Shown: piece after piece, positions 7,402-30,671 of the stretch
How the letters are laid out: the number at the start of each line of letters is the position of its first letter
How positions within the stretch are numbered: the first letter of the stretch is position 1
Assembly (NCBI RefSeq): GCF_026571515.1
Contig: NW_026853157.1
Location: forward strand, 124,001-188,000
Length of the DNA: 64,000 bases
Source: Ruditapes philippinarum
Lineage: Eukaryota
Direction: 5' to 3'
Position numbers and translations under genes: made by a program
Notes under the pieces: generated by a model
Databases searched by the model: none
The model's input: only the letters and a program-made list of their open reading frames with translations
What the model was told of the DNA's origin: nothing

Positions 7402-9264
7402 TTAATTTGATAAAACACGTGAGAATCGAAGTCTTATATGATTTAAAACGTTATTTATTACTAGTAATCTCCGAGTTGTTCCTTTTATAATAGTTATTTT
7501 ATGATTTCTCAGCATAACCCTCAGCTCTTTTCTAAACCTCTGGCCTGTTAAGCAGTATAGAAAGAAATGAATTGAATTGTTAATATACTGTAACATATTA
7601 ACAAGAGCCCACCAGAAATTATGCCAGGCTATATCTTTGGGTGTTTCATATGAGTACCAGTACTCTTGTCCAATCAGAAACACCATGATTGGTGATGTTG
7701 TTATGAGAAAAACACAGTTTACTGTTAGAAGCATAACTGTTAGTGTAGAAATCCTTCGAGCTGGTGAATAATTTTTGAACTTTGACGTCTGCCGCGATTT
7801 CTGCTTTGACGTCATTTGTGACGTAATTTCCTGTGACAGCATTTCACTTGATTGCTTTGCGTCTTGTATTGTCATGGATTGAACGGTCAGATCTGAATTA
7901 CTTTCTCGTGTTAACGGGCTATCAAGCTTTGTTGCTAAAGATGATTTCCGTTGTAGTGTCTGTTGTGACAACATTTCACTTTTTTGCGTTGTGTCTGGCA
8001 TCGTCATGGATTGAACATTCAGATCGGAATTATTTTCTCGTGTTAACGGGCTATCAAGCTTTGTTTCTAAAGATGGTGTCCGTTGTAGTGTTTGTTGTGA
8101 CAACATTTCACTTGTTTGCGTTGCGTCTTGCATTGTCATGGATTGAACGGTCAGATCTGAATTATTTTCTCGTGTTAACGGGCTATCAAGCTTTGTTTCT
8201 AAAGATGGTGTCCGTTGTAGTGTTTGTTGTGACAACATTTCACTTGTTTGCATTGCGTCTTGCATTGTCATGGATTGAACGGTCAGATCTGAATTACTTT
8301 CTCGTGTTAACAGGCTATCAAGCTTTGTTTCTAAAGATGGTGTCCGTTGTAGTGTCTGTTGTGACAACATTTCACTTGTTTGCGTTGTGTCTAGCATCGT
8401 CATGGATTGAACGTTCATATCTGAATTACTTTCTCGTTTTAACGGGCTATCAAGCTTTGTTGCTAAAGATGATTTCCGTTGTAGTGTCTGTTGTGACAAC
8501 ATTTTAGTTGTTTGTGTTGTGTCTAGCATCGTCATGGATTGAACGTTCAGATCTGAATGTACATCTCTAGCCGATGGGCTACTGAGTCTGGGTGCTAATG
8601 TTGGTGTTCGGAAGAATCCAAGTCTTCTTTGGGAACTGGTCATCTCGTAGATGATTTTTACGTTGCACGCTATCATAATTGAAAACGGAATAAAACAAAA
8701 TGATGAAAAATCAATCCATGGCCAAATATATTTCATAAAATCATTTGGTTTGCCACCACACCTTATTTCCAAGGATCCGGCAAGCTCCATGTTCCAAAAG
8801 AAATGAATGTTCTTCACGACAAAGAGAAAAATAATCACGGCTATTACCAAGCCTGATCTTTTCAATGTGCACAAGATCTTTGCTTTAAATGGAACAGAAA
8901 CCGATAAAAATCTATAAATGGTCACAGTGACCAGAACCCAGACGGTGAAATCAAGGGATAAGTAGACTAAGAACGTGTGAATCTTGCAAGAAGCGTTGGA
9001 AAAACTCCTCACATCCACATCGAAAGCTTTTATTATCCAGTAACGTAGCAATCCAGTGTACAATGTAAATAAATCACCAAAACTTAAACAGGTCAGGTAA
9101 AACATTGCTGTGGAAAAGCGAAATTTTGGACGCAGGAGGACACATATGGACATAATATTACCAAATGTGCCCAATATTATAAGAATGGGTGAAACATAAA
9201 TCCAAAGAAAGTTCCCTATATTGTACTGTATAAAGTCTTCAAGATCTTTCTCTGTTTCATTCAT
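7402..9264 (-). CDS. GPCR1: class A 7TM receptor, FMRFamide-receptor/srw-like, 620 aa, expanded ICL3
   Basis: Seven hydrophobic segments. TM1 GTFGN, TM2 LSFGDL, ECL1/TM3 Cys (ASCKIH), TM3 end TIYRF, ECL2 Cys, TM5 FIPF, TM6 TTSP, TM7 NNSIHFFLY, helix 8 RFRKEL. Uninterrupted ORF. Confidence 0.95.
   Translation of the reverse strand: MNETEKDLEDFIQYNIGNFLWIYVSPILIILGTFGNIMSICVLLRPKFRFSTAMFYLTCLSFGDLFTLYTGLLRYWIIKAFDVDVRSFSNASCKIHTFLVYLSLDFTVWVLVTVTIYRFLSVSVPFKAKILCTLKRSGLVIAVIIFLFVVKNIHFFWNMELAGSLEIRCGGKPNDFMKYIWPWIDFSSFCFIPFSIMIACNVKIIYEMTSSQRRLGFFRTPTLAPRLSSPSARDVHSDLNVQSMTMLDTTQTTKMLSQQTLQRKSSLATKLDSPLKRESNSDMNVQSMTMLDTTQTSEMLSQQTLQRTPSLETKLDSLLTRESNSDLTVQSMTMQDAMQTSEMLSQQTLQRTPSLETKLDSPLTRENNSDLTVQSMTMQDATQTSEMLSQQTLQRTPSLETKLDSPLTRENNSDLNVQSMTMPDTTQKSEMLSQQTLQRKSSLATKLDSPLTRESNSDLTVQSMTIQDAKQSSEMLSQEITSQMTSKQKSRQTSKFKNYSPARRISTLTVMLLTVNCVFLITTSPIMVFLIGQEYWYSYETPKDIAWHNFWWALVNMLQYINNSIHFFLYCLTGQRFRKELRVMLRNHKITIIKGTTRRLLVINNVLNHIRLRFSRVLSN
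7818..8610 (-). repeat. Coding minisatellite, 132-bp (44-aa) unit, about 6 copies, in GPCR1 intracellular loop 3
   Basis: GGCTATCAAGCTTTG recurs every 132 bp (about 7917, 8049, 8181, 8313, 8445). GPCR1 minus GPCR2 length is 620-444 = 176 aa, exactly 4 x 44. Confidence 0.95.
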
Positions 9265-9800
9265 AGCTGAATAAAATCATTAAATCGCGTTGTTTATAAA
9301 GGTAAGATCCCTGTAATGGGTATATTTAGGAACCTGATCAAGCTTAATATTTTATCAAAGTTCTCTATTTAATTTAATATGTATGTTGTTTGTCCTAATA
9401 TCCTATTTATTAAGTAAAACTGTCAATTCACATTTTAACTAACGTTGTCAATACACATTATACCGTCGATCATTAATTGCTGTTGTATATGGCAGTGAAA
9501 AAGTTTTGATCAGTATTCTTTACATCTCACATTATATGCACACTACAGCATCAAATTAATAAAAGTGTTCAGATTATCCGCCAGTTTATTCATTTAAAAC
9601 TGTAATTAATCTTAATAATTTTAGTTATGTATATTATAAATCTCTTGCATACAATGATATACACAAGAAAATATATATCTATTTATATTATAAATTACCT
9701 ACGTGATGAATATCTGCATTTCTGAAAGACGGACACGAGTCATTAAGTGATTTGTCTACTTGGTTATTGACAAGTGCTTCTAACAATGACCCTGTGGGGG

Positions 9801-9971
9801 TGTATAGTAACTAGACAAAATGCGTTGTAGTTTCCAGATTCGACCTTTACTTATCAACAATCATATATAGTGTAAACAACAATACAATGTTAAGTCGGAA
9901 GTGACGTTAACGTAAGCGCGGAACGTCACGTTATGCAAGGCTCTATAAATTGTCGTTATCAGTTCCCGACA
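9801..9971 (-). repeat. Probable 3' LTR of the BEL/Pao element (171 bp)
   Basis: On the minus strand it begins TGTCGGGAAC after GCGCCCCGAGTA, ends GTTACTATACA and contains AGTAAA. No second LTR is available to confirm the ends. Confidence 0.6.
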
Positions 9972-12900
9972 TACTCGGGGCGCGAAATGTTATTTAAAGT
10001 TTAGTAATAAATCCATTATTTGAACACTACAGTTGCTATAGTATCTCATATAAAGTATTATTAATTAAAAAGCAGTCATAAATATATTGAATACAGTCTC
10101 TTATTCATGTATCACCTTTCCTTTGAAATTTTAGATTAATTCATTTTGATGGGGTAATGTTTTACAATAGCACGATTGCTTCGAATAAGTCCATCTTTTC
10201 CTGGCACGAGTTCTTCAACCACAGCAAGTTTCCATAATAAGCGGGGAACATCGTCGTGGACTAATATAACGTCTCCAACGGATATCGTCTGGTCATTTTT
10301 GCCAGTAGTCTGATGACGTTCTCGTAAAGCTGTCAGGTATTCGTGACGCCATCTATCCCGGAAGTGGTTAAATAACTTCGTTTGTATCGTAGCATGTTTG
10401 ATAACTGACGATCGGTCACTTGGCGTAGGAAATGTACATGTAAGGACATCCTCATAAGGGAGTTTGGTTATTCGTCTGCCATAAAGTAAGTGTGATGGTG
10501 TAAGTACTTCCGGTTTATCTGAATTACCAGAACACACATATGTCAACGGCCTATCGTTAATCATTGCCTCGATTTCTGTGATAACAGTCTGTAAAGTTTC
10601 GTAGGTTACATAGGAATGTCCTAGCACTATCTTTATTGTTGTTTTCGTCAGACCTATGAGACGTTCCTACATTCCACCAAACCAATGGGCGCGTTTCGGT
10701 ATCATCTTCCACTCAATTCCTCTGTTGTTGAGTTCTTCTCTAACTGTGAGTGAGTGAAACAAATCTCTTAGTTGTTTTGAGGCTGATATGAAGGTGTTAG
10801 CGTTGTCTGACATCATGACATCTTTTCTGCTACAGTAACATCGGAAAGCTTGTAGGAATAATTCTGCTGCTAGGGTTGAAACAAGTTCTAGGTGAACTGC
10901 TCTCGTAGTAGCACATGTAAACAAGCATAAGTAAGCTTCTATGTCTCTTTTGTTGCTATCCAGAACCAGTAATGCTCCAGAGAAGTCTACTCCTGTATAA
11001 GTAAAGGGTTTGACGTCAGAAACTCTACACTTTGGTAATGGAGATGGGTCAGGTGCTGAATAGGGTTTCACAATAATCTTCACACATGTACATTTACATC
11101 ATATGTTTTTTACAGTTTGACGAATCGAGGGAATCCAGTACTTTTGTCTTAAAAACGTAATAGTTGAACTAACGCCGGCATGCAATTATCTGGAATGTGC
11201 GTTGTTGACAACTAACTTTGTAAATGGATGTTTAGCTGGTAGTAGGTACGGAAACTTGGTCAGCTCGTCTAATGGAGCATTGTGGATACGACCACGACAC
11301 TTTAATATGCCATTATCTAAGAATAACTGAAGTTGTCTACATAATGGAAGTTTGTTTCTTTTTGATTTTGTATCTTCTATTTCTGCTTGATATTTGGACA
11401 TCTGGCAACACCGTAAACACATCTCCTCAACTCTGCGTAGTTCATCTGTAGTTAACAAGTCTAATCTTCCAGTATGACTCCCGCCTCGACACTTGAATAT
11501 AAAACGCAGGACATAAGCTGTAACCCTGAGTAGCTTTGTTAACGAACTGAATCTTGACATGTCTATAAAACTGATGTTGCTTAATCTTTTGGCTCGGTTG
11601 CTGGGTGTGGTAAGCAATGTAGGTCCATGAAACCATAGATTACTGTTCTTGAAGTGAGTCACAGAGATTCCCCTCGTAAGTAAATCGGCAGGGTTTTCTT
11701 TCGTCGGACAATAATTCCATTTCCGGTTTTCGGACAGCGCGTGGATTTCAATCACTCTGTTCCTTACAAATTGTGAAAGGGTTTTAGGCGTCTGAAGCCA
11801 AAAAAGCACAATCTGACTATCTGACCACAGGTATATCCGTGTTATGCTGGTGTTTCGCTGCATATGTTTTCTGAGCCGGTATCCAATTACTGCCACCATT
11901 AGCTCTAACCTAGGTAACGTTAACTTCTTCAATGGAGCAACCCGAGTTTTAGCCATTACCAGAGTAGATTGGTTGTCTCTACAGATGTAAGCCGTAGCAC
12001 CATACCATACCAAGCTAGCGTCGCAGAATATGTGAATGCACGTGTTACTTGATGCGTTTAATGTATTTTTGAAGTAGTATCTAGGAAACGTAGTTTTTGT
12101 CACGGATTTCAAATTTGTTATTAAACTACGCCATTTTTCTTGAATACTGTCAGGTAATGGCATATCCCATTCAAACTTCTGTTGCCATAACTCCTGTAGA
12201 CGTAATTTAGCTCTGATGGTAACTGGACTTAGTAAACCTAAGGGATCATAGATTCGAGATGTATGTTGCAATATTTCTCTCTTTGTTACAATCTGGGTAT
12301 TTGGTATATTTCTGACAGGATACAGTAAAACGTCACTATTTGTGTCCCATTTCGTTCCAAGTACCTTAGGGAGTTTGTGCGTTATCTAATACTGAATCGT
12401 TGATTGCCTGTATTTGAAGCATTTTACTATTTGAACTCCAGGACCTAAGGTTAAAACCTGCAGATGACATCAGCTCACGTGAATCGCTGTAGAATTGTAG
12501 AAGTTGTTCTTCCTGTTGGAAAATTGATATCACGTTATCAATGTATAGATCTTGACGTAGGTATTCACTAGCTTGCTTGTCGTTCTTAAGTTCAAGGTGC
12601 TTAAGTATAGTTGCGCAGAGAGTAATAGGGGACGACGTAGCCCCGAAAAGGACTGCTCGGTATCTATATGTTGTCGATTCGCTGTTGGGGTTACTTGGAT
12701 CACTGAGCCATAGAAATCGCGTCACATCTCGGTTGTTCTCATCAAGAGTAATGTTGAGGAAGGCTTTCTCAATATCGGTTGCTATGGCGTATTTATTCAT
12801 TCGAAAACGAATAAGAATTCCAGTTAAATCATTCAGTTCAGGTCGTGTCGACATCAAGCAATCGTTCAGACTAGGCTGGTCACGTGACTTTTAACTGCAG

Positions 12901-13717
12901 TCATACACGATGCGGATAAGTGTCGTGTGCGAGTCCTTCTTTACATAATGATGTGGTATATAATGTACAGGGTTTGATGTGGTAACATTTGTATCACACT
13001 CTCCCCTTAAGATTCTAAACCCCGGATGTAGTTTTCCATTTTGTCGTGAAACCTGCGTAGACTCGTTACACTGTTGTCTGGAATCGGCAAATCTAAAAGC
13101 GACTGCATGTACTATCTATTATTTTATGAGACTGTCCGAATCGTTCTTGTAACAAATCTATTGCATTCTGGTAATTTCCGTTAGTTAATGGAAAACCTGC
13201 TATGGCGGTATATGCAGTGTCTTGTAGTAAGGAACCTACAACTTTTGGACATCAGATAGTGTTTGGTTCAAATGTATAGCAGCCTCATACGAGTCCCAGA
13301 ATGACTGCCATTTTTCAACATCTCCATCAAACGTAGGCAAAGTCAGTTTAGGTAGTCTGTGAAAAGATGAATTATCAGACGACACCCTTAAGTTATGAAT
13401 AGAAAAGTTCTCACTTGATAACGTTCTAGCACTACCGTTAATGTCCTGTGAATTACGGATCACGCTGCCGCTGCCAGTGTTATTAGATTTGGTAATATCT
13501 ATCTTCGTAGTTTCAATCGTAAATCAATTAAATATTCGTCACTCTCTATTAATTCTGTTTCCAAATCGTCTATATTTGCATGATAAACAATCTTATCGTT
13601 GAGGTTCTTGATAATCTCGGCTTTTTCTTCCATGATTTCGAGCAGGGCTGACTTCTTCGAAAGTGACAACTTGTCTTTAAATTTCTCCAGTTGTCTAGAA
13701 ATAAGACGTCGCTGGTC
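9801..13717 (-). mobile_element. Degenerate BEL/Pao LTR retrotransposon (5' LTR missing, internal deletion between gag and RT)
   Basis: Minus-strand order: gag-like (LPKLTLPTFDGDVEKWQSFWDSY, 13236-13463), RT (DIEKAFL...FGATSSP...LYIDN, 12366-12857), Pao RNase H (YDPLG...FCDAS...LPRLEL...WSDS...NPADLLTRG, 11186-12271), integrase (GVDFSG...RAVHLEL...SDNA, 10667-11083) and Pao C-terminal region (LTPSHLLYGR...WRHEYL, 10136-10627). Many stops and frameshifts. Absent from duplication unit 2. Confidence 0.92.
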
Positions 13718-14039
13718 TTTTAATATGATTATACAGTAGGCTACATAAACAGGTAAAGTCAGAATTGAAATTGTTAGAATAGTATTTATCTAGTTTCATG
13801 GTGGTGTTAAGAAATTTAGTACACGCTAAGGCAGTCTTGACTGTATACGAAACAACTGAAATGTTCCTTCATATTATGACATTCTTTTCTTTGAACTTGT
13901 ATAGATTTAATTGGTTTATATGTTTAGTGTAGATTTTCAACAATCGATCACTCGATACTCATTCATATCCTCTGAATCAGGTAAACAAATCTGAGAACGA
14001 GGCTCTTGATTGAATTAAAAAAAAACCCACAAAAACCCC

Positions 14040-14099
14040 AACAAATCAACAACAAAAATAACAGCAATAACAACAAAAACAACAAACAAGAACAACAGC

Positions 14100-14142
<43 letters not shown>

Positions 14143-14143
14143 C
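14040..14143. repeat. (CAA)n microsatellite
   Basis: Direct run of CAA/ACA triplets; the source of the poly-C and poly-L ORFs in the track. Confidence 0.9.
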
Positions 14144-14651
14144 AAAACGTTCGCTGAAATCAAAGTCTAGTATAAACAACAACTTAAATGCAACGCACGT
14201 CCCTATCATTTAATACATATATAATTAACAGTACCAGAATTTTATATTATTTCTGTGCTATTTCAATATGCCCAGCCCATAGACGCGCCTGATTAGAACG
14301 GTGAATATCTATTTGTAGTTTAAAAATTGCCTCGTTTTAAAGTATGCATCGGATTTTAATTACGTTTACTAAAACCAGCTACGCCCACACTTCTCTTTGA
14401 ATAAGAGTTAAAATCTAAAAAGAGTTGCAATGGGGTCCTGTAAAATCATGGAGAGTATCAGGTTTTGTTATTAGCTCCTGGGCTTGCCTTATTTTTTAAC
14501 AAACGATATACATGTATCTCTAGTTTTCAAAGTGGGCGTTCGGATATAATATTATGAACGCAATGTCGTCAATTTCTGTGAAGTACTTAAACCAGTGCAT
14601 ATTTCAACATTTTAAGGACGACCGAAAAGTAAGCTCAAGCCTCTGCCTGAA

Positions 14652-14810: not shown

Positions 14811-15209
14811 AAAATCATCAGTGTCATAGCAGCTTGTAGTCTTTTGGACCATCGAAAAATTGACATTGTCATCTTTAAAGATCTTAAAAGACCCTTTCAT
14901 GATATTTAAATCAAGTCCAGGGGAGGCTTATTTGTTTATGACACGGCCACTTCCATAATATTGCCCTTAATATAAAGCGTGTATGCCAAATTTACTAGTT
15001 CTTACTCAATTGGAACTTTTCAGTCATGTATTGCTCACGTATTTCTAATTGAGCAATATTCATCAAGTGAACATTATTTACTTCTCAATTCTCACATTTT
15101 ATGATCATTTAGATAAGCAAAACTCATGTTTAAATACTACCCACTTCACGAGGATTACTCACTTAGCAATATTTACAGTGTGGACAGCTAGCTTATGGAT
15201 CGTCGGTGG

Positions 15210-18200
15210 TTTTTCTCAGGGGCCTCTCCCTGCAAAGCCTTCCTTCACCAGTAAAGCTGAAAAGTCGCCATATGACATATATTGTATGGGTGTGACGTTA
15301 AACCCAATCAATCAATCAATCAATCAAACAAACAAACAAACAAACAAACAAACAAACAAACGAACAAATGACCATTCTAATTGACCACTACTCGACAAAT
15401 AAACTGTCTTAACTTAGCAATACTCACAGCGTGGACAATTTTTACCGCGCACTTACTTATTTGCAAGAATTTCCGATACAGTACATAGAATACAGGCTAA
15501 TCTAGATTATAAAATAAATTACGGACGTGAACTATCAGATGTTAATCAAATAAACTAGTTTTAATAAATTAATATTTACTAATGTTTCAATTTTGAGAAC
15601 TACTTAACACAGCGGAAGTTGTTTAATAGTGCTTGTCAACGATATAAACCCTCTGTATGCATGTATTATATGAACACTTATAAGTCGCGTCATGTCATGG
15701 GATTGGTCGTTATGTAAATATGTATTGTTGCATGTCGTGATTCAATAGTTAAATAGATAAAAAAACGTGTTCTTTGTCACTGTAGTTCCAAATTAATGTT
15801 GTTCCCCATGACAAATTAACTGCAATGTTCAATATTTGAATATTTAAATAATATAATGCTACGGAAGCGCGTCCTGGTGCCAGATTTTTATAATGTTCTA
15901 CAAATAGATCAAATCCTATTTAGGAGATAAAAAGCCTCTTTTTTATAGACCATTATGAATTGGCACCAGAACGATTCCGTGTCAGGACGCTTTCGTAAAA
16001 TGCAATGTCTACGTCATGACGGTGTTTCTTTTTTTTGAAAATAATTTAAAATTTTAGTGTGTATGTTTGCAAAATTGAAAACGTAAATCGAACCAATAAA
16101 TTCAGTTAATTCTTTTTAAACTTTTTAAACTATGTTCGAAATTAATCAACCAGGACGTTTATAATTTCTGAAGATGAATACAAAACATCTCATTTATACA
16201 TGTTAATGCAGTAGATAAAACTTAACATCATTTTATTCTACAGAAGTATTTCACTTTGGCGAAAGTAGTAATAAATCGGCATAAAGAATACTAAATTGGA
16301 GTAAGAAGTAATAAAATGTCTTCAGTTTTTATGGCTGGGTATAAAACAATAACTGTTAATAAGTTATTTGATTGTAAGACAAATTTGTCTTATTTGGTCA
16401 CATGACAGACACGCGGTAGTAATATGGTACTTGCAACTTGTTATTTAAATAATATTTGACTTTATCGGCATTAAGCGTTCCTTAATTGGTAAACAATAGG
16501 TCAAAACGTCCGTATAACCATCTAATAACAAAAAGAATAAAAATATACACGTACAAATAAAATTAAAAATAAAGAAATGAATTGAATTTCAGAACAACAA
16601 TGTGAGACTTTAATAAATGTTACATTGTATTTCTTTCATGCCAGCTATGACATGTATTCTTATTTTCATCACCGTATTTCTACACCGTTTCTGACGGAGT
16701 TAGGACTCAAAATGCATCTGTTAACACAACTTATAAAACCTCGTAAATTGTCGGAGACATGCTGCTTTAAACAACAACGTTACATGTACTTTCAAGGCAT
16801 TTGGACACTACATAAACTATTTGTACACTAAACTATATATGCATAACTTGATAAGTACACTTTTTTATGGCCAAATTTCCTCAAAAATATCTTCCTCAAC
16901 CAAATGACCATATATTTATTATTCTAAAGTGCTAACAATATTTCTGACAACAAAAGCTGTAGTGTTTGGTTTTAAAAATAACAATTTAAACTCGAAATTG
17001 TAAATTGCAATTTATACTTTTTAATTGGTAAGTATAATTTCAAATCAAAGTAACCTTATATAAACAAGAAACATATTGTTGATCGTGATTTCAAAATGAA
17101 ATAATGAACATTTAAAAACTTTTCCTAAGACCTATGTGAAGAAAATACTTATTTATTTAAAATTCACGATATATCTGCTTGGCCGCAACGGTGTGGCATG
17201 CCGTTGTTTCCGTGAGCAGGAAACTTTTCATTCATTGCTTAGTACTGGTTGGTTTCCGGAACGGATTCGAGTGCTTCATTATGCTTATAGCTACCTACGC
17301 AATCGATCTAGAATGAAATAGTATATACTTATACATCTATATGTTTCAAACAGTTAAGAAGCTTTATCTTCATATATTGTAACACTGAAAATACGTACAT
17401 TAAAACTAGAAGAGATGTGAAAATGACAATGACAATAAATTGTATTTGCATTAAACAATATCAAATGTTAACAGCAACAAATGATGAAAATTGTGGGCAG
17501 TTATAAGTCCTCTATCTTCCATTAAACATTGACGAATGGAATGCATCTTCAGTACAATCTGACTAAAGTTCAGCTCTACTTATTTCTGTTGTGTAGATCT
17601 GATGACGATATGCTTCGCCTTCTTTATCATTCATTCGGATTCCCGAGAAAGCTATTTCTAGTCATGCAATCAAACCGGTTTGACATAGACATGAGAAGAA
17701 GTATCAAATTTTCCAGGATTAAAATTAGAAACCGTATCGCTTTCAAAATTATGAAAGCTCGTCAATGATTGGTAGCGTCAAAGATCACCAGAAATGACTT
17801 CATATTTGGTCACGGTCAGATCTAAAAAGTGGGGCGTTATTAAGAGCTGAATTTAATCAGATTGTCTTCAGTAAGCAATAAAATGTCTATGGTACAAAAT
17901 GCATACATTAAACACGAATAAATTGAAGTGTTCGGTCGTTTACTGAATTTACTAAGTTTACTACTGCAGAGAGAATATTTAATGATTTAGCTTGCAAAAT
18001 AAGAAACTGAATAAAGAAATGTTTCAATAAACGTATTTAGTGAAAGTGATTAAATAAATGTATATATATATATAATGTAGTACCACGCAATTCAATTTAC
18101 TCAAGTCCAAATTAAAATAAAGACAACAACAACGACAAAAAACAACAAAAAAGCAGAAACAACAACAACAAAAACAACAGAAAACAAGAAGAAGATTATT

Positions 18201-21200
18201 TCACGAAGAAAAGAAATATGATTAGTGTACATGTAGTTTAAAAAAAAAGATCTGGATGTAAGGTTATACACAGTTAATTTGATAAAACACGTGAGAATCG
18301 AAGTCTTATATGATTTAAAACGTTATTAATTACTAGTAATCTCCGAGTTGTTCCTTTTTTAATAGTTATTTTATGATTTCTCAGCATAACCCTCAGCTCT
18401 TTTCTAAACCTCTGGCCTGTTAAGCAGTATAGAAAGAAATGAATAGAATTGTTAATATACTGTAAAATATTAACAACAGCCCACCAGAAATTCTGCCAGG
18501 CTATTTCTTCTTGTGTTTCATCAGAAAACCAATACGTTTGTCCAATCAAAAACACCATGATTGGTGATGTTGTAATGAGAAAAACACCATTTACTGTTAG
18601 AAGCATAACTGTAAGTGTAGAAATCCTTCGAGCTGGTGAACGATTTTTGACCTTTGACGTCTGCCGCGATGTCTGCCGCGACGTCATTTGTGACGTAATT
18701 TCACGTGACAACATTTCACTTGTTTGCGTTGCGTCGTGTATTGTTATGGATTGAACGGTCAAATCTGAGTTACTTCTTCGTGTTAACGGGCTATCAAGCT
18801 TTGTTGCTAAAGATGGTGTCCGTGGTAATGTCTCTTGTGACAACATTTCACTTGTTTGCGTTGTGTCTAGCATCGTCATAGATTGAGCGTTCAGATCTGA
18901 ATGAGCATCTCGTGCCAATGGGCTACTGAGCCTTGGTGCTAATGTTGGTGTTCGAAAGAATCCAAGTTTTCTTTGGGAACTGGTCATTTCGTAGATTATT
19001 TTTACGTTGCACGCTACCATAATTGAAAACGGAATAAAACAAAATGTTGAAAAATCAATCCAATGCCAAATATCTTTCATAAAATCATTTGGTTTGCTAC
19101 CACACCTTATTTCCAAGGATCCGGCAAGCTCCACGTTCCAAAAGAAATGCATGTTCTTCACGACCAAGAGAAAAATAATCACGGCTATTACCAAGCCTGA
19201 TCTTTTCAATGTGCACAAAATCCGTGCTTTGAATGGAACGAATACCGATAAAAATCTATCTATGGTCACGGTGACCAGAACCCAGACGGTGAAATCCAGG
19301 GATAAGTAGACTAAGAACGCGTGAATCTTGCAAGAAGCGTTGGAAAAACTCCTCACATCCACATCGAAAGCTTTTATTATCCAGTAACGTAGCAATCCAG
19401 TGTACAGTGTAAATAAATCACCAAAACTTAAACAGGTCAGGTAAAACATTGCTGTTGAAAAGCGAAATTTTGGACGCAGGAGGACACATATGGACATAAC
19501 ATTACCAAAAGTGCCCAATATAATAAGAATGGGTGAAACATAAATCCAAAGAAAGTTCCCTATATTGTACTGTATAAAGTCTTCAAGATCTTTCTCTGTT
19601 TCATTCATAGCTGAATAAAATCATTAAATCGCGTTGCTTATAAAGGTACGATCCCTGTAACGGGTATATTTAGGAACCTGATCAAGCTTAATATTTTATC
19701 AAAGTTCTCTATTTAACTAAATATGTATGTTGTTTGTCCGAATATCCTATTTATTAAATAAATTAGTCAATTCACATCTGTTGTATATAGCGGTTGAAAA
19801 ACTTTGATCAGTAGTCTTAACATCTCACATTATATACACACTACAGCATAAAATTAATAAAAGAATTAAGATAATCCTCCAGTTTATCCAATTAAAACTG
19901 TAATTAATCTTTATAAATTTAGGTATGTATATTATAAATCTCTTGCTAACAATGATATACACATGAAAACATCTATTTATATTATAAATTAATTACGTGA
20001 TGAATATCTGTATTTCTGAGAGACGGACATAAGTCATTAAGTGATTCGTCTACTTGGTTATTGGTAAGTGCTTCTAACAATGATCTTTTATCCTAAACGC
20101 CAACGTAAATTAAATAGATAAAAGTAATGTTATAATAATCTTATATTCAAAACTTGTTTTGCAGTAAGTATGAACAAGTTCTTTAAATACATAACAGTGT
20201 ATACATACTATCATTAAATAATTTCTTTGTAGGCAACTCCCATAATCATATTTTCAAATCCTGTTTTGCGATATGAACAAGTTGTTTATATAATAGTGCA
20301 TACATACTATCTTTTAAATTAAATCATTTCTTACTAGGCAACTCCCACAAATATCTTGAAAACGGAAGATTCCTCTCAAACAATGATAACAATTAAAATT
20401 AAATGAAATATGCAGATTCGACTTGTTCATGAGAGATAATGTAAAAGTGCAATAGCTGTCACAATCCTAGATTCGTCATAACCGGTATTCGACATAAAAC
20501 TGACATTATTTTGATATGACATTTTATAGGTTTTTCATTATGATTTTAATATAGTAGGCTACATAAACAGGTAAAGTCAAAATTGAAATTGTTAGAAAAG
20601 TACTTATCTAGTTTCATGGTGGTGCTAAGAAATTTAGTATACGAAACAACTGAAATTTTCCTTTATATTATGACATTCTTTTCTTTAAAATGGTGTAGAT
20701 TTAATTGGTATATATTTTTAGTGTAGATTTCCAATAATCAATCAGTAGATTCTCATTCATATTCCCTGAATCCGATAAACAAATCTGAAAACGAGGCTCT
20801 TGATATAAAGGTAATTTTATTTATTATAAGTAAGATCAATTTGTTTTCATTCTGGGAAAATTGACTGGCTTGATAGCATGGCTAAATAGCAAACAAAAAC
20901 ATTCGCTGAAATCAATGTCTAGTACAAACATGAACTTTAATGCAACTTGCGTCTCTATCATTTAATTATATATATACATATATAATTAACAATACCGGAA
21001 TTTTATATTATTTCTGTGCTATTTCAATATGCAAAGTCCTTAGGCGCGCCTGATTAGAACGGTGAATATCTATTTGTAGTTTACAAATTGCCTCGTTTTA
21101 AAATATGCATCGTGTTTTAATTGCGTTTACTAACACCAGCTACGCCCACACTTCTCTTTGAATAAGAGTTAAAATCTAAAAAGAGCTGCAATGGGGTTCT

Positions 21201-22380: not shown

Positions 22381-22471
22381 TAAGTTATATTCTCATAATT
22401 ACTTTAAAATAAATCTTGAATATTTCTATCAGATAATATCAACAACATACGAGTATGTACAAGTTTTATAC

Positions 22472-22701: not shown

Positions 22702-25191
22702 GTTGAATATTTCTACCAGATAGCATCAACAACATACGAATACATATAAGTTTTATACATTTATAATTTTCAACTCATGCATCTTTTAAGTTGTTTCTCC
22801 ATTAGTACTCGTTTACTGCCTATTGCCACATAAATATCGCAAGCGTTTTGAATAATGAAGGATAATGTCAAAGTTTTATTGCGTTTGTTTTTGCAGTTTT
22901 GTGTCCCTCTCAGTTACTATATTTTGCTGTTGTCATTTTCTGTATTGGATTATACTGTTCCGACGCAAAATCGAAGAACATTAAATGTAATTATTATAAA
23001 AAGCATAAAACAGTGATATGGCAAGACTTAAATCGGTTTAATAAATTCTAACATTTCCCCTTAGACCTATCTCTTGTTTGAAATTTCTTATATAAAACAG
23101 CTCACCAGGATGTTTTATTATTTCTGAAGATGTATAACAAACAGTTAAATACAAAAAGTAGATCAAACATTTATTGTCACGTATTTTGTAAGTAGTATTT
23201 CAACTAGGTGAAAGTAGTAATAAATTGGCGAAAAGAATAATAAATTGGCGTAAGCAGTAATAAACTGTCTTCAGTATTTATGACTGGGTATAAAACAATA
23301 AATGACAAGTGATTTGATTGTTGGGACAAATTTGTCTTATTTGATTAAATGATCGACACGCAGTAGTACTGTGGTAAAATCGATGTTTATACGGACAGTT
23401 TGACCTATTGTTTACCAATAAAGTAACACTAAATGTCAATAAAGATAGAATAAAATATTAATTAAATAATTGAATGGAAGTGCAAGAGACCAGTTCGATA
23501 GTAATTATAAACAAAGGTCTATGAAATTAATCTGAAAACTGAAACTTCCTGTCTGTTTGGTGCATTTGTGGTTTTATTGGTCTATAGTAAATAAAGAATA
23601 CCAATTTAATAATAATAAGGAAAAAATTGTTTGAAATGTACACATTGTAATTAAAGAAAATAGGCGAATGCAAACTTTAAGTAGACATATTTTATAAAAT
23701 GTGCTAACTGTACTTGTATTGGTCAAAACAGAAATAAATAAATAAAATATATTATATATTAATATATATTAATAATATTTATAGAATTAATGTAAGAGTA
23801 TTATAAATATCCACAATGCATGTGACATTTTGTATTTTCTCAACATATTACTACCCTGATAATTACGGAATGAAGCTTATTACATTTTTTAAAAGTTATT
23901 AAATTTCATGGACAATAAGTATTTTAGGCAGTCTAATTGATATTTTCCTTTATTTAGAACTATATATTAAAAATGGAATATTTCGAAGGTATCATTTCTT
24001 TAAAATATTACATAACATATAAGATATAGTGGTTTAACGCCGACCACAAGTATTTCTTTTGATCACATGTTCTCACATATTTATTCTTAAAATTGATAAA
24101 TATCAGAAAAAAAAATATCCATCGGAAGCACCAAAAGCAGCAAAATAACTTGAAAATTGCAGACTTGGTTTTATTGAGTTTGTACATGAGGGATTATGGA
24201 AAAGTGCAACATCCCTCACGCCCTCTAGCATCAGCTTGAGCGGTAGTCAATTTTTAACAGTGCCGAAATCAATGCATTTTTGTTCTAAAGTGCAAACATT
24301 ATTTCCAGAATCAATGCAACAAAAAGCGATAATTATTTTTTTTTAAATGATAATGTTTACTGGAAATTTATTATACCTTCAACAGCTACTTATAAATTGC
24401 AAATTAAAGTATTAATGTTTTGTAAACTGCACACTTATTGAATGCATTAAAGAATTGCACACTTAAATTAATATACAAGTATGTATAAAATGTTGGTATT
24501 ATAATAGCTGTTCCATGACGTTTTTTTTTAAAGAAATACTAATCTATTACTATATGACAGTTAAGAGGCTTTTGTCATACACCGAAAAGCCAAAGGTAAA
24601 ACAAAACAGGTCAAGGTTAACCTGATCAAAACATTTTCTATATTCTCAAACAAATCATAAAATTACATTATCGGGATATACAAAAGCAAATATATACAGA
24701 GTGAACACATTTCGATATTAATGTTGAGGGTTGCAGATCTTTAGTTTATTACAAGTAACACGTAAGAAAATTACAATTAATTCAACTGACAATTTCTGGG
24801 AGATGGATAAACAGCTTATATTATATAGGATTCTGTGATAATATTATGAAATATTAAAGTAAATTAGTCTACAAAGTGCACAATTTTCATAAATAATATA
24901 AATATTGATCAAAACATCAGATCTGTTCCTATGAAATATTGCTCACAAATGTTTGTAAAGTTCAAAGTGATTTTGTAAGAACATCTATATGTTGAACAAT
25001 GATATTTAGTTCTAGAACACACTATTTTCTGCTATATAATTATATATAATATCGGATCATGTGTCTTACGTGCCACAGACATCCATAAATAATTCTTTTA
25101 TGGTTAGTTGTTATGTCTGATACTACATTCTTTAACCATAATTATTCTTTTTTATGCAGACCTTCCTTTTAAGACCATTTCACTTTAATAG

Positions 25192-26349
25192 TTAGACTTC
25201 AGTTCCACCAGATGGTTCTTTTACAACAGATATCTTATGCTTCCTCAGAAACATACTTTTCAGTTCGTTTCTAAATCTCGGACCGGTTACGCAATATAGA
25301 AAGAAATGAATTGAATTATTGATATATTGTAACATATTAACAACAGCCCACCAAAAGTTATGCCAGGCTATTTCTTCTGGTGTTTTATCTGAATACCAAT
25401 ACTCTTCTCCAATCAAGAATGTCTGAATTGGTGATGTTGTTACAAGAAAAACACAATTAACTGTCAGTAACATAGCTGTAAGTGAAGAAATCCTCCGTGC
25501 AGGTGAACGATTTCTAACCTGTGACGTCTGCCGCAATGTTTGTTGTGATGTCATTTGTGACGTAATTTCCCGTGTTTGCGTTGTGTCCTGCATCGTCATG
25601 GACTGAACGGCCATATCAGAATTACTTTCCCGTGTTAACGGGCTATCAAGCTTTGTTGCTAAATTTGGTGTCCGATAGAAATCATTGTGTTTATCAAGCT
25701 TCTTTTGAGAACTGACCATTTCGTAAATAATCTTTATATTGCATGCTATCATGATTGAAAATGGAATCAAACAAAATGTAGAAAAATCAATCCATGGCCA
25801 AACATATCTTAAAAAGTTATTGGCAGCTTCCGTTTTGGCATCACACCTGAATTCCCAGGTATTTACAAGTTGAAGGTTCCAAAAGAAATGCATGTTCTTG
25901 ATGACCAAGAAAACTATGATAGCTGCTATAACCCAGCCTGCTCTTTTCAAAGTGCACAAGATCTTTGCTCTGAATGGAATCGATACTGATAAACATCTAT
26001 CTATTGTCACAGACACCAATACCCAGACAGTAAAATCAAGGGACAAGTAGACTAAAAACGTATGAATCTTGCACGAAGCGTTTGAAAAATGTCTCACGTC
26101 TACATCGAAAGCTTTACTTATCCAGTAACGTAATAATCCAGTGTACAGTGTAAACAAATCACCAAAACTTAAACAAGTTAGATAAAACATTGTTGTCGAG
26201 CAACGTAATTTTGGACGTAGGAGAACACATATTGAAAGAAAGTTTCCAAATGTTCCAACTATTATAAGAATTGGTGAAACATAAATCCAAAGATAGTTTC
26301 CTATGTTATACTGCCTAAAGTCTTCAAGTTCTTTCTCCGTGGTGTTCAT
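25192..26349 (-). CDS. GPCR3: class A 7TM receptor, FMRFamide-receptor/srw-like, 385 aa, C-terminal TEV
   Basis: Same 7TM motifs. TIDRC, one ICL3 unit, N-terminal NTT sequon, ends GGTEV*. Confidence 0.95.
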   Translation of the reverse strand: MNTTEKELEDFRQYNIGNYLWIYVSPILIIVGTFGNFLSICVLLRPKLRCSTTMFYLTCLSFGDLFTLYTGLLRYWISKAFDVDVRHFSNASCKIHTFLVYLSLDFTVWVLVSVTIDRCLSVSIPFRAKILCTLKRAGWVIAAIIVFLVIKNMHFFWNLQLVNTWEFRCDAKTEAANNFLRYVWPWIDFSTFCLIPFSIMIACNIKIIYEMVSSQKKLDKHNDFYRTPNLATKLDSPLTRESNSDMAVQSMTMQDTTQTREITSQMTSQQTLRQTSQVRNRSPARRISSLTAMLLTVNCVFLVTTSPIQTFLIGEEYWYSDKTPEEIAWHNFWWAVVNMLQYINNSIHFFLYCVTGPRFRNELKSMFLRKHKISVVKEPSGGTEV

Positions 26350-28250: not shown

Positions 28251-28890
28251 CGAGGGTGTGTAATGCAATATGGTCAATAAAGTAACACTAAACAATTTGC
28301 TAACATCCCTCATGCCCCTTTCACCGGCCTGAGCGGTACTCAATTTTCTGCACTCAAAGGTGCAGGATTCAATTGTCCCGAATGACCAGAAAAACAACAT
28401 ACTGAAGTGATAACAACGCTTCCAAATAATCGTTTGCTACAGAAATATAGATGTTTAATTACATTTTTAAACGCTTTAACAGTGTCATCCTTAGCTATAC
28501 CTTCAATAACGGACAAATGGCCAATCAATGACCATTTCTACTCAGAAAGCATTGACCTGCAAGGTGTTTTTGACAGTCTAGGAGATGGGAAAAAGTCACA
28601 GGGTGCTACGTCTGGAGATTACGCTGGATATTTAAGAAAGTTTTTTTCTTGAAAATAAATCAATCACAGTAGCTATATTACTAATACTTTATTGTTGCGA
28701 TAAATAATACAAATATAATTATAACCATAAAAAGCAGAATTTTTTGCGTTCTGCTTGTGCCTTTATGTCTGCACGTATTTCAGCACCATTAACTGAGTGT
28801 TCACTGGCCATACGTTTGATGAAGTTACGCCTGTATGTCAATAAAATTCTTAATCGGTTGACTACACATTATGATTTGGGCACCATTTAA
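28251..28890 (-). mobile_element. Decayed mariner (Tc1/mariner) transposon relic
   Basis: Minus strand at about 28590-28625 reads PA*SPDVAPCDFF, a degenerate form of the mariner YSPDLAPxDF motif, followed by KHLAG and GIAKDDTVKAFKN. TA|CGAGGG terminus at 28249. A related end fragment lies at about 24185-24260. Right boundary uncertain. Confidence 0.65.
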
Positions 28891-29558
28891 AGGAGATACT
28901 TTGAAGCATAGCATTGTTTATACAAACACACGAATCACCAGCCAAATTAGATAATATACTTCATATTGCATTACATTTTGACTCACCGTCGTATTTGTCC
29001 GTGAATATGAACTTTTATTTTACAATTTTGAGGCTTATCAGCTTACAGTCACGGTACTTAGAATATTCTGCTGATAATGTGTTATTGTTATGCAAGTTGG
29101 TAGTTATAAGAGATAAATATGGCTTCTACAAGTAGCACTGTACCTTTAAGGAATTACTTACAATTTTCTGCTGGATTTTAATTTCATTAAATATACACAC
29201 AATTATAACTACACGCATTCACTTTCTTTAATTTGCAATTTTGAGAATTCATGCAGACGTAAAAACCCGAATTTATGAAATTAAGATCATAAAAGCGTGA
29301 ATTTATAAAGTTGAAATAGTAAAGTAAATGCTCATGTTGTGAAAACGTTGATATGTGATTAGAACATGAAATCATAAATTCACAAGGTTGAAATCGTTGA
29401 ATTTGTAAAACTGAAACATAAGCCGTAATCTATCACTACCGGCAAGTGGTCAGATAAATAAAGATAAGTAATGTATTCAAATAATAATTAATAATTAATC
29501 ATCTCCAATATGAATCTATAGTTATATCATAATGAAAGTTTTCAGTAATATTTATCAT

Positions 29559-30671
29559 TTAAACTTTTGTTCCACCAGACTGTCCTTTTACAATATCAAG
29601 GAGCATCGTCTTCAGTTCGTTTCGGAATATCGGACCTGTCAAACAGTAAAGAAAGAAATGTACAGCGTTGTTAGTATATTGCAACATATTCACAACAGCC
29701 CGCCAAAAATTACACCAGGCAATTTTTTCTTCTGGTGTTTTATCAGAATACCAATATTCTTTTCCAATCAAAAACGCTTGAATTGGCGATGTTGTTAAAA
29801 GGAAAACACAATTAACAGTCAGTAACATAGCTGTCAGTGAGGAAATCCTTCGTGCTGATGAACGTTTTTTGACACGTGACGTTTGCTGCGATGTCTGATG
29901 TGACGTCATTTGTGACATCATGGACGTCGACTGAACAGACTTTTCAGAACTATTATCCTGTGATAACGGGCTATCATGCTTAGGTTTTAAAGTTGGTGTC
30001 CGATAATAATCTTTGTGTTTGTTCAGCTTCTTTTGAGAACGGATGATTCTGTAAATGATTTTGATATTGCATGCTATCATAATGGAAAACGGAATCAAAC
30101 AAAATGTTGAAAAATCAATCCATGGCCAAACATATTTCAAAAGGTTACTGACTGCTTCCGTTTTGGCATCACATTCCGACGTATCGACAAGTTGAAGGTT
30201 CCAAAGGAAATGCATGTTCTTGATGACCAGCAAAAATAAGATAACAGCTATTACATAGCGCGATCTTTTCAGAGTGCATATAATCTTAGCTTTGAATGGC
30301 ATGGACACCCGCAAACATCTATCTATTGTCACAGACACCAGAATCCAAACAGTGAAATCCAGGGATAAGTACACTAAGAACGCATGAATCTTGCAAGTGG
30401 CGTTTGAAAAATGTCTCACGTCCACATCGAAAGCTTTACTTATCCAGTAACGTAACAATCCAGTGTACAGTGTAAACAAATCACCAAAACTTAAACAAGT
30501 TAGATAAAACATTGTTGTCGAGCAACGTAATTTTGGACGCAGGAGAACACATATGGATAGAATGTTCCCAAATGTCCCAACTATTATAAGAATTGGTGAA
30601 ACATAAATCCAAAGAAAGTTCCCTATATTGTACTGTCTAAAGTCTTCAAGAGTTTTTTCCGTGACATTCAT
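29559..30671 (-). CDS. GPCR4: class A 7TM receptor, FMRFamide-receptor/srw-like, 370 aa, C-terminal TKV
   Basis: Same 7TM motifs. TIDRC, shortest ICL3, TM7 NNAVHFFLY, ends GGTKV*. Confidence 0.93.
   Translation of the reverse strand: MNVTEKTLEDFRQYNIGNFLWIYVSPILIIVGTFGNILSICVLLRPKLRCSTTMFYLTCLSFGDLFTLYTGLLRYWISKAFDVDVRHFSNATCKIHAFLVYLSLDFTVWILVSVTIDRCLRVSMPFKAKIICTLKRSRYVIAVILFLLVIKNMHFLWNLQLVDTSECDAKTEAVSNLLKYVWPWIDFSTFCLIPFSIMIACNIKIIYRIIRSQKKLNKHKDYYRTPTLKPKHDSPLSQDNSSEKSVQSTSMMSQMTSHQTSQQTSRVKKRSSARRISSLTAMLLTVNCVFLLTTSPIQAFLIGKEYWYSDKTPEEKIAWCNFWRAVVNMLQYTNNAVHFFLYCLTGPIFRNELKTMLLDIVKGQSGGTKV

What the first reader, a model, noticed from the sequence alone, without database searches (positions are those of the whole stretch)
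7818..30671. GPCR array whose paralogues differ by a 44-aa Ser/Thr-rich ICL3 repeat (about 6, 2, 1, 1 units)
Seen: the four receptors share a conserved 7TM core, but ICL3 is built from a 132-bp unit (RTPSLxTKLDSPLTRESNSDLxVQSMTMxDxTQTSEMLSQQTLQ). GPCR1 is exactly 4 units longer than its recent duplicate GPCR2, and the frame is intact throughout. Established: Ser/Thr clusters in ICL3 are GRK phosphorylation and arrestin-recruitment sites in class A receptors with short tails, such as muscarinic and alpha2-adrenergic receptors. Inference: a coding VNTR could set desensitisation or G-protein coupling separately from ligand recognition, and may be length-polymorphic between individuals.
Basis: partly seen in the sequence, partly recalled or inferred. 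Interest (0 to 1): 0.8.

Follow-up and report, generated by a model that had tools for sequence, protein, structure and literature searches.

The report
Repeat-expanded inner loop in clam receptors
Four neighbouring, recently duplicated orphan receptor genes of a clam differ mainly by 1, 1, 2 or 6 copies of a 44-residue Ser/Thr-rich module in their disordered third intracellular loop; the copies arose by unequal crossing-over and so far appear to drift neutrally.

Summary
Four intronless class-A GPCR ORFs lie on the minus strand: G1 7402-9264 (620 aa), G2 18274-19608 (444 aa), G3 25192-26349 (385 aa) and G4 29559-30671 (370 aa). They carry a 132-bp in-frame repeat between TM5 and TM6 with 6, 2, about 0.9 and about 0.65 units. 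G1 is exactly 4 x 44 aa longer than G2.

The six G1 units all differ. The four internal units are hybrids of the two ancestral units, which is the footprint of unequal crossing-over and argues against an assembly artefact.

The array is a lineage-specific clade of a venerid bivalve; orthologues in other species have one unit. The loop is predicted to be disordered and is 32% Ser/Thr. It is 295 aa long in G1.

The functional reading is not supported beyond plausibility:
- The new units evolve at dN/dS of about 1.
- Four of their seven private replacements remove a Ser or Thr.
- Phospho-code motifs are no more frequent than composition predicts.
- All four paralogues already exceed the roughly 45-aa ICL3 gating threshold.

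G1's 7TM core is still under constraint (omega 0.32) and G1 is probably transcribed. However, G1 alone has Tyr in place of the DRY aspartate.

Unit-number polymorphism could not be tested. The closest known case is the DRD4 exon-3 VNTR. I class this as a new member of a known kind, of moderate interest.

The parts
7402..9264 (-). G1: intronless class-A GPCR ORF, 620 aa, with six ICL3 units and YRF in place of DRF at residues 117-119
7819..8610 (-). G1 ICL3 minisatellite: six 132-bp (44-aa) units. u1 8479-8610; u2 8347-8478; u3 8215-8346; u4 8083-8214; u5 7951-8082; u6 7819-7950. u1 is ancestral type A and u6 is ancestral type B. u2-u5 are hybrids with a B-type 5' part and an A-type 3' part.
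18274..19608 (-). G2: the recent duplicate of G1, 444 aa, with two ICL3 units and an intact DRF motif
18691..18954 (-). G2 ICL3 units: u1 (type A) 18823-18954; u2 (type B) 18691-18822
25192..26349 (-). G3: 385 aa. It has the shortest branch and is closest to the ancestral form. It has one unit with a 5-aa deletion at about 25558-25674, and its C-terminus ends in TEV.
29559..30671 (-). G4: 370 aa, with one truncated unit of about 29 aa at about 29916-30002. Its C-terminus ends in TKV.
4168..9789 (.). G1 copy of the segmental duplication, about 82-91% identical to 15207-20083. It includes both flanks of the gene.
15207..20083 (.). G2 copy of the segmental duplication. Homology resumes at 20529-21256, matching 13714-14496.
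9790..13713 (-). Insertion found only in the G1 copy, about 525 bp upstream of the G1 start codon. It holds broken BEL/Pao retrotransposon pol ORFs at 10136-10627, 11186-12271 and 12366-12857.

Best explanation
This is a real in-frame 132-bp coding minisatellite. [quoted passage not shown] The array consists of four intronless orphan class-A (Srw/peptide-receptor-like) GPCR genes in a venerid clam.

History shown by the sequence:
1. The orthogroup's ICL3 holds one 44-aa Ser/Thr-rich module with a conserved S-D/E-x-x-x-Q-S-x-T core.
2. The G1/G2 ancestor duplicated that module into units A and B. The same ancestor evolved fast and lost the conserved C-terminal T-x-hydrophobic motif.
3. A segmental duplication of about 5-11 kb then produced G1 and G2 (dS about 0.12).
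4. In G1, unequal crossing-over between B and A created hybrid units with a B-type 5' part and an A-type 3' part. There are two junction classes. Further duplication of these hybrids took the array from 2 to 6 units and ICL3 to 295 aa.

Mechanism (inferred): the loop is a flexible, phosphorylatable tether that tolerates changes in length. Expansion multiplies Ser/Thr acceptor sites and the conserved core motif, and it lengthens the ICL3 'gate' over the G-protein pocket. The effect is probably quantitative and small, and the new units currently drift neutrally. G1 itself remains a constrained and probably transcribed receptor gene, but its D3.49Y change suggests altered basal activity or coupling.
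For: Repeat and frame.

Location: the repeat lies between TM5 and TM6 and is predicted disordered (pLDDT below 50 for residues 231-492).

Unit history:
- All six units differ from one another by 3-44 nt.
- At 25 sites that distinguish A from B, u2 and u5 switch from B to A between nt 52 and 64. u3 and u4 switch between nt 91 and 122. This is the expected product of unequal exchange and is not what an assembly duplication would give.

Taxonomic spread:
- Orthologues from other species carry one unit (P0003, P0004 from Mercenaria, P0005).
- The four window genes form one clade that excludes those orthologues (support 98/96).
- The unit occurs nowhere else in the 1.4-Gb genome.
- No multi-unit protein appears in the 5.8-billion-protein word search.

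Constraint:
- G1-G2 core omega is below 1 (Fisher p = 7e-5).
- The G1 lineage has 12 synonymous and 14 replacement changes (omega 0.32, p = 0.005).
- The new units have 2 synonymous and 7 replacement private changes (omega about 1.1).

Composition: ICL3 is 295, 119, 74 and 65 aa in G1-G4, with 32% S+T against 14% elsewhere. C-tails hold no phospho-codes.

Transcription:
- Runs X1 and X11 lack the high-copy DNA repeats that dominate the DNA runs.
- X1 nevertheless holds contigs across 7332-9600, including the repeat bins; the long contigs listed for the non-repeat parts differ from G1 by 0-1 letters.
- X11 holds a near-exact contig (6 differences in 795 nt) at 8516-9310 but has no depth at 7338-7671.
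Against: - Unit number on a single molecule is not independently verified. The Logan contigs break in the repeat, and only one assembly contig carries it.
- That X1 and X11 are RNA runs is the tool's guess. Both also cover some intergenic DNA.
- The neutrality estimate rests on 9 substitutions. An intact frame is uninformative here: the probability of no stop arising in 9 random changes is 0.62.
- The core SD-x-x-VQSMT motif is unchanged in all six units. This could mean constraint, but it is not statistically distinguishable from chance (my estimate is p of about 0.4).
Confidence: 0.6

Rival explanations
1. Adaptive rheostat. Unit number is selected because each unit adds GRK or other kinase phosphorylation sites and arrestin-docking sites. 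The paralogues, and possibly alleles, would then differ in desensitisation, internalisation or G-protein coupling while sharing a ligand pocket.
For: - C-tails are short and poor in phospho-codes, and ICL3 is long with 32% S+T.
- Arrestin recruitment through ICL3 is documented for M2R (PMC13105114).
- ICL3 length gates G-protein access (PMC10033409).
- The core motif S-D/E-x-x-x-Q-S-x-T is conserved across heterodont bivalves and is intact in all six units.
- The G1 core is under purifying selection.
Against: - The new units show omega of about 1.1, and 4 of 7 private replacements remove a Ser or Thr.
- Phospho-code counts equal the shuffle expectation (25 observed against 24.1 +/- 5.1).
- All paralogues are already above the roughly 45-aa threshold.
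- No polymorphism or functional data are available.
Confidence: 0.2
2. G1 is a decaying or signalling-dead duplicate, and the expansion is a symptom of lost constraint.
For: - G1 alone among 36 homologues has a non-acidic residue (Tyr) at D/E3.49 of the DRY motif. The Tyr codon is also present in contigs of X1, X11 and X4.
- A BEL/Pao retroelement fragment is inserted about 525 bp upstream of G1.
- G1 and G2 lost the conserved C-terminal T-x-hydrophobic motif.
- The new units drift neutrally.
Against: - The G1-lineage core omega is 0.32 (p = 0.005), lower than for G2.
- The 1,863-bp ORF has no stop or frameshift.
- G1-exact contigs at depth 38-110 are present in a run that behaves like RNA.
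- From general GPCR knowledge, D3.49 substitutions often give constitutively active rather than dead receptors.
Confidence: 0.15
3. The six-unit count is an assembly artefact, either an over-expansion of a 2-3 unit array or a chimera of haplotypes.
For: - Only one contig in the assembly holds the locus.
- Short-read contigs cannot bridge the array.
- Run X2 has no depth in the bin 8173-8339.
Against: - Every unit is distinct.
- The units form an ordered hybrid pattern: u2 and u5 are one class and u3 and u4 another.
- The frame is exactly preserved with no indels.
- The unit-specific bins are all covered in X1, X11 and X4, which come from three studies.
- 19 runs from 11 studies hold at least 59% of the locus's words.
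Confidence: 0.05

Closest known systems
Human/primate dopamine D4 receptor (DRD4) exon-3 VNTR (PMC3164202; PMC9911804)
   Same: Both are imperfect in-frame tandem repeats in the DNA that encodes the disordered third intracellular loop of a class-A GPCR. In both, repeat number varies (2-11 in DRD4) while the ligand-binding 7TM core stays unchanged.
   Different: - The DRD4 unit is 48 bp (16 aa) and Pro-rich. The unit here is 132 bp (44 aa) and Ser/Thr/Gln-rich.
- There is no sequence homology, and the receptor here is an orphan, not an aminergic receptor.
- The variation shown here is between paralogues. Allelic variation was not tested.
ICL3-dependent arrestin recruitment in receptors with short tails (M2 muscarinic; PMC13105114) and ICL3 length gating of G-protein access (PMC10033409)
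   Same: Both have a short C-tail without phospho-clusters and a long, disordered, Ser/Thr-rich ICL3. ICL3 exceeds 45 aa in all four paralogues.
   Different: - There is no evidence here for phosphorylation, arrestin binding or gating.
- G1's 295-aa loop exceeds the 10-240 aa range quoted for human class-A receptors.
- The loop is built of repeats rather than unique sequence.
[quoted passage not shown]
   Same: - The genes are intronless and tandemly arrayed, and they form a species- or genus-specific clade.
- They belong to a family with at least 85 matches in this genome.
- They have Srw-like Pfam matches.
- Automatic names in other molluscs are inconsistent.
   Different: - This orthogroup is conserved as a single gene across heterodont bivalves (57-86% identity), so it behaves more like an endogenous-ligand receptor that duplicated recently.
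- The other paralogues examined in this genome have short ICL3s of about 30-40 aa, and some have long C-tails instead.

Membership tests
Rhodopsin-like (class A) GPCR, Pfam PF00001 7tm_1 | Match to the 7tm_1 profile above the gathering score, over its full length | tested here: met
   scores of 45.6-73.9 bits against a cut-off of 30.5, covering profile positions 1-255 of 260 in all four proteins.
Rhodopsin-like (class A) GPCR, Pfam PF00001 7tm_1 | Seven transmembrane helices plus helix 8 in a structural model | tested here: met
   helices at 12-43, 52-81, 90-123, 134-158, 175-217, 507-536 and 542-573, with helix 8 at 575-587. pLDDT is about 83-97 over most of the core.
Rhodopsin-like (class A) GPCR, Pfam PF00001 7tm_1 | E/DRY motif at the cytoplasmic end of TM3 | tested here: inconclusive
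   35 of 36 homologues have D/E-R-x, including DRF in G2 and DRC in G3 and G4. G1 has YRF.
Coding VNTR in GPCR ICL3 (DRD4 type) | In-frame tandem repeat located in the ICL3-coding DNA | tested here: met
Coding VNTR in GPCR ICL3 (DRD4 type) | Repeat number varies between individuals of one species | tested here: inconclusive
   four runs from four studies were laid on the locus. Their contigs break inside the repeat, and none of the joints listed lies in the array (13 further joints were not shown). The depth hole in X2 at 8173-8339 proves nothing.
Coding VNTR in GPCR ICL3 (DRD4 type) | Homology to DRD4 or to aminergic receptors | tested here: not met
   the best solved relatives are generic class-A receptors (CysLT1 at E = 7e-11). 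No dopamine receptor appears among the 60 matches shown. This is an analogue of DRD4, not a member of its family.
ICL3-phosphorylation/arrestin-recruiting receptors (M2/alpha2 type) | Short C-tail without Ser/Thr clusters, together with a long Ser/Thr-rich ICL3 | tested here: met
   tails are 18-40 aa with 0 phospho-codes. ICL3 is 65-295 aa with 28-33% S+T.
ICL3-phosphorylation/arrestin-recruiting receptors (M2/alpha2 type) | Agonist-dependent ICL3 phosphorylation and arrestin binding | not testable with these tools
   This needs biochemical assays.
Lophotrochozoan lineage-specific class-A GPCR expansions (candidate chemoreceptors) | A species- or lineage-specific clade of tandemly arrayed paralogues | tested here: met
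   the G1-G4 clade has support 98/96; segmental duplicates; at least 85 family matches in the genome.
Lophotrochozoan lineage-specific class-A GPCR expansions (candidate chemoreceptors) | Expression in chemosensory tissue, or an exogenous ligand | not testable with these tools
   No tissue-resolved raw reads were available.

The most novel reading that the evidence does not exclude
Copy number of a conserved ICL3 linear motif (S-D-x-x-V-Q-S-M-T within a 44-aa module) acts as an evolvable dial on receptor regulation. On this reading it is length-polymorphic in clam populations and produces, in G1, a class-A ICL3 (295 aa) longer than the 10-240 aa range quoted for human class-A receptors. Together with the D3.49Y change and the replaced C-terminus, this would make G1 a receptor with a rewired intracellular interface and an unchanged ligand pocket. 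It would be an invertebrate counterpart of the DRD4 VNTR, with the advantage that natural 1-, 2- and 6-unit versions sit side by side.
Probability: 0.15. Interest if true: 0.6.

Novelty: new member of a known kind. Interest (0 to 1): 0.35.

Why it matters
If unit number does change signalling, this array is a natural allelic-series-like set. It offers 1, 2 and 6 copies of one ICL3 module on nearly identical 7TM cores (G1 and G2 are 91% identical). That would allow a direct test of how ICL3 length and phospho-site multiplicity tune arrestin recruitment and G-protein gating. That question is currently studied with artificial insertions and with the DRD4 VNTR.

If unit number does not change signalling, the locus is still a clean, datable example of how unequal crossing-over grows a disordered loop inside a working membrane receptor. 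It also shows how much length ICL3 can tolerate.

Tried and rejected
1. Independent verification of unit number and of polymorphism. The look-up of sequencing runs and read laying returned only Logan short-read contigs. The longest pieces in the array are 117-119 nt, so no contig bridges it.

2. Search for other carriers of the unit.
- Own genome: the unit occurs only in this array.
- Word search of 5.8 billion proteins with the repeat region: only G1, G2, G3 and the single-unit protein P0003.
- A 20-nt pattern against metagenome contigs: one hit, in an unrelated bacterial glycosyltransferase-like ORF. This is a chance match.

4. Other long paralogues on contig C15416 (ORFs of 433-546 aa). Their extra length is in the C-tail, not in ICL3, and it is not repetitive in the same way. 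ICL3 expansion is therefore not general in this genome's family.

5. Arrestin 'phospho-code' motifs as evidence of function. Rejected, because the counts equal the composition-shuffled expectation.

6. The Pfam Tex55 match on G1 residues 364-439 (E = 2.3e-6). I treat it as a compositional artefact of the repeated S/T/Q-rich units. The other three paralogues lack it.

7. The 224-aa plus-strand ORF at 7833-8507. I reject it as a gene: it is a by-product of a unit that happens to lack stops in that frame, and that frame has stops elsewhere in the array.

8. A frameshift origin of the G1/G2 C-terminus. The alignment with G3 is too weak (about 12 of 26 nt after a 1-nt shift, judged by eye) to claim it.

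9. Earlier scan notes. They concern other parts of the window and did not bear on this finding.


Full report
**Observation**

The window holds four uninterrupted minus-strand ORFs:
- G1 at 7402-9264 (620 aa)
- G2 at 18274-19608 (444 aa)
- G3 at 25192-26349 (385 aa)
- G4 at 29559-30671 (370 aa)

All four match Pfam 7tm_1 over the whole profile and above the gathering score. G3 and G4 also match the Srw serpentine family.

Tandem Repeats Finder reports a 132-bp period at 7832-8558, with 5.5 copies, 92% matches, no indels and a score of 1202. It reports the same period at 18705-18951 with 1.9 copies.

Cutting the G1 protein every 44 residues from residue 219 gives six units. G2 has two. G3 has one with a 5-aa deletion, and G4 has about 29 aa of one. 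The length difference is 620 - 444 = 176 = 4 x 44 aa.

An AlphaFold2 model of G1, built on 36 homologues, gives a confident 7TM core. TM5 ends at residue 217 and TM6 starts at 507. Residues 231-492 have pLDDT below 50. The repeat is therefore ICL3 and is predicted to be disordered.

**Organism and family**

The best named relative is a Mercenaria mercenaria protein (78% identity). More distant hits come from Mya, Dreissena, scallops, oysters, abalones and Lingula. The automatic names contradict one another: neurotensin-, psychosine-, TRH-, GHSR-, FMRFamide- and CysLT-receptor-like.

Against solved structures there are only generic class-A matches, with a best E-value of 7e-11. This is therefore an orphan lophotrochozoan class-A receptor of a venerid clam.

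The window is part of a 310-kb contig of a 1.4-Gb assembly. The wider family has at least 85 matches in that genome. This fits the lineage-specific class-A expansions described for Lophotrochozoa (PMC11886862).

A maximum-likelihood tree places G1-G4 in one clade (support 98/96). That clade excludes the nearest foreign sequence P0003, Mercenaria P0004 and P0005. G3 sits on a very short branch (0.036). G4 (0.20) and the G1/G2 stem (0.21) sit on long branches. The array therefore arose by local duplication after the split from those species.

**History of the repeat**

Orthologues in other species carry a single copy of the module. Its core, S-D/E-x-x-x-Q-S-x-T, is recognisable as far out as Mya.

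Within G1 all six units differ, by 3-44 nt. G1 u1 pairs with G2 u1 (type A), and G1 u6 pairs with G2 u2 (type B). The G1/G2 ancestor therefore had two units, A and B. A and B are old relative to the gene split: dS between them is 0.5-1.0, against about 0.12 between G1 and G2.

At 25 sites that distinguish A from B, the four internal units are B-type at the 5' end and A-type at the 3' end:
- u2 and u5 switch between nt 52 and 64.
- u3 and u4 switch between nt 91 and 122.

This is exactly the product expected from unequal exchange between a B unit and an A unit in a two-unit array, followed by further duplication. It gives at least two junction classes. Synonymous divergence among the internal units (0-0.15) places these events between the time of the G1/G2 duplication and the recent past.

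This ordered mosaic, together with the absence of any indel, argues strongly against an assembly artefact.

The G1/G2 duplication is segmental. Region 4168-9789 matches 15207-20083 at about 82-91% identity, and 13714-14496 matches 20529-21256. A 3.9-kb insertion is present only in the G1 copy. It carries broken BEL/Pao pol ORFs (Peptidase_A17, RVT_1 and DUF5641).

**Constraint**

Outside ICL3, G1 and G2 differ by 26 synonymous and 33 replacement changes. Omega is below 1 (Fisher p = 7e-5).

Polarised with G3 and G4 as outgroups:
- The G1 lineage has 12 synonymous and 14 replacement changes (omega 0.32, binomial p = 0.005).
- The G2 lineage has 7 and 17 (omega 0.67, not significant).

G1 has therefore been a constrained gene for most of its life.

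By contrast, the private substitutions of the new units number 2 synonymous and 7 replacement (omega about 1.1). Four of the seven replacements remove a Ser or Thr: T>K, T>M, T>K and S>N.

The open frame carries no information about selection here. Only 5% of single-base changes in the array create a stop, so the probability of no stop after nine random changes is 0.62.

**Composition**

ICL3 measures 295, 119, 74 and 65 aa in G1-G4. It is 28-33% Ser+Thr, against 14% in the rest of G1. The C-tails are 18-40 aa and hold no arrestin 'phospho-code' patterns.

However, the number of phospho-code patterns in ICL3 equals the shuffled expectation (25 against 24.1 +/- 5.1 for G1). The patterns therefore follow from composition alone.

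Sadler et al. report a threshold of about 45 aa above which ICL3 gates G-protein access, and a range of 10-240 aa in human class-A receptors (PMC10033409). All four paralogues are above the threshold. G1 is above the human range.

1. G1 alone among 36 aligned homologues has Tyr instead of Asp/Glu at position 3.49 of the E/DRY motif: YRF against DRF or DRC. No difference at that codon (8914-8916) is listed for contigs of X1, X11 and X4, which cover it. It is therefore not an assembly error.
2. Twelve of 14 heterodont members of the orthogroup end in T-x-hydrophobic (TEV, TKV, TEL, TGM and similar). This resembles a class-I PDZ ligand; that reading is my inference. G1 and G2 instead end in a 25-aa basic segment (…TTRRLLVINNVLNHIRLRFSRVLSN) that is modelled as a helix.
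3. The retroelement lies about 525 bp upstream of the G1 start codon.

**Reads**

Nineteen runs from 11 studies hold at least 59% of the locus's sampled words. All are stored as short-read contigs.

Four runs from four studies were laid on 5000-10000. The contigs break inside the repeat, so neither the six-unit count nor length polymorphism could be tested.

Runs X1 and X11 are labelled RNA by guess. They have essentially no depth on the high-copy DNA repeats at 5167-5333 and 9843-10000, where the DNA runs reach roughly 70-1100-fold. X1 nevertheless covers 7332-9600 at depth 38-111. Its long contigs listed for the non-repeat parts show 0-1 differences from G1, which is far closer than G2 would be. 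X11 holds a near-exact contig (6 differences in 795 nt) at 8516-9310, with no depth at 7338-7671.

That pattern is what an mRNA of about 2.3 kb would give. I rate G1 transcription as probable but not shown. No joint that skips units is among the joints listed for the laid runs.

**Interpretation**

The shown parts are the anatomy and the history. One ancestral module became A plus B, and then unequal crossing-over expanded the array to six units in G1.

The functional part is inference. A longer, more Ser/Thr-rich and multivalent ICL3 could change kinase or arrestin docking, or gating of the G-protein pocket.

The available signals point to a tolerated, near-neutral expansion rather than a selected dial:
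- omega of about 1 in the new units
- loss of Ser/Thr in those units
- motif counts at chance level
- all paralogues already above the gating threshold

G1 is not obviously dying, given its core omega of 0.32, its intact ORF and its probable transcript. Its D3.49Y change and its altered C-terminus do suggest that its intracellular behaviour has shifted.

**Comparison and novelty**

The nearest known system is the DRD4 exon-3 VNTR, a 48-bp (16-aa) unit present in 2-11 copies in ICL3 (PMC3164202; PMC9911804). This locus works like that system at the DNA level but is not homologous to it. Its unit is three times longer and is Ser/Thr-rich rather than Pro-rich. So far only paralogue-level variation is shown.

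I file it as a new member of a known kind (a coding minisatellite in a GPCR ICL3), inside a known kind of gene family expansion. It is of moderate interest, mainly as a natural 1/2/6-unit series for testing ICL3-length effects.

**Limits**

- The metagenome scan gave only a chance bacterial hit.
- The BEL/Pao element was only described.

Noticed in passing
window 8914-8916 (G1 codon 117): G1 has TAT (Tyr) where G2 has GAT (Asp) at position 3.49 of the E/DRY motif. It is the only non-acidic residue at this position among 36 homologues. No variant is listed at this codon in contigs of three runs from three studies.
   Followed up: partly
window 7402-7480 and 18274-18352 (3' ends of G1 and G2), compared with 25192-25215 and 29559-29582: G1 and G2 lack the C-terminal T-x-hydrophobic motif (TEV, TKV, TEL and similar; PDZ-ligand-like). 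That motif is kept in 12 of 14 heterodont orthologues. G1 and G2 end instead in a 25-aa basic segment modelled as a helix. The origin of the change (frameshift or not) is unresolved.
   Followed up: partly
window 9790-13713, with minus-strand ORFs at 10136-10627, 11186-12271 and 12366-12857: A degraded BEL/Pao retrotransposon pol (RVT_1, Peptidase_A17, DUF5641), split into at least three ORFs. It is inserted only in the G1 copy of the segmental duplication, about 525 bp upstream of the G1 start codon.
   Followed up: partly
window 5167-5333, 6169-7003, 9843-10000: High-copy interspersed repeats. Summed contig depth in two DNA runs is about 70 to over 3,000, against about 5-20 on single-copy flanks. 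Many contig joints and loose ends occur at 6675-6987. The repeats were not classified.
   Followed up: no
window 7833-8507, plus strand: A 224-aa antisense ORF inside the repeat array. It is a by-product of a repeat unit that lacks stops in that frame and is not a gene.
   Followed up: yes
G1 residues 364-439 (window about 7948-8175): A Pfam Tex55 (PF17819) match at E = 2.3e-6, just above its gathering score, found only in the six-unit protein. It is most likely a compositional artefact of the repeat.
   Followed up: partly
Proteins P0040 (Gigantopelta, 438 aa) and P0041 (534 aa): Distant family members also have enlarged ICL3s. P0040 has a short tandem 'IESKEGIK' repeat, and P0041 has a Lys/Asn-rich loop of roughly 200 aa. 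ICL3 growth therefore seems to recur independently in this family.
   Followed up: no
All four window GPCRs, TM7 (for example G1 residues 562-570): The canonical NPxxY motif is replaced by N-x-x-H-F-F-L-Y (His at 7.49 and Phe at 7.50). More distant paralogues in the genome have N-F-F/I/L-L-Y. This is a family-level oddity of the activation switch.
   Followed up: no
window 5364-5423, 16261-16315, 23210-23264; also 7252-7330 and 18119-18187: The same 20-bp microsatellite (GAAAGAAGTAATAAA…) lies about 2 kb downstream of each of G1, G2 and G3. ACA/CAA low-complexity tracts lie just 3' of the stop codons of G1 and G2. These are landmarks showing that the duplications included the flanks.
   Followed up: partly
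window 3603-4139; 47808-48090; 60191-60365; 45499-45929: Other tandem repeats, with periods of 190 bp, 117/39 bp and 33 bp, and a 431-base N stretch. None was examined, and the N stretch was left untouched.
   Followed up: no
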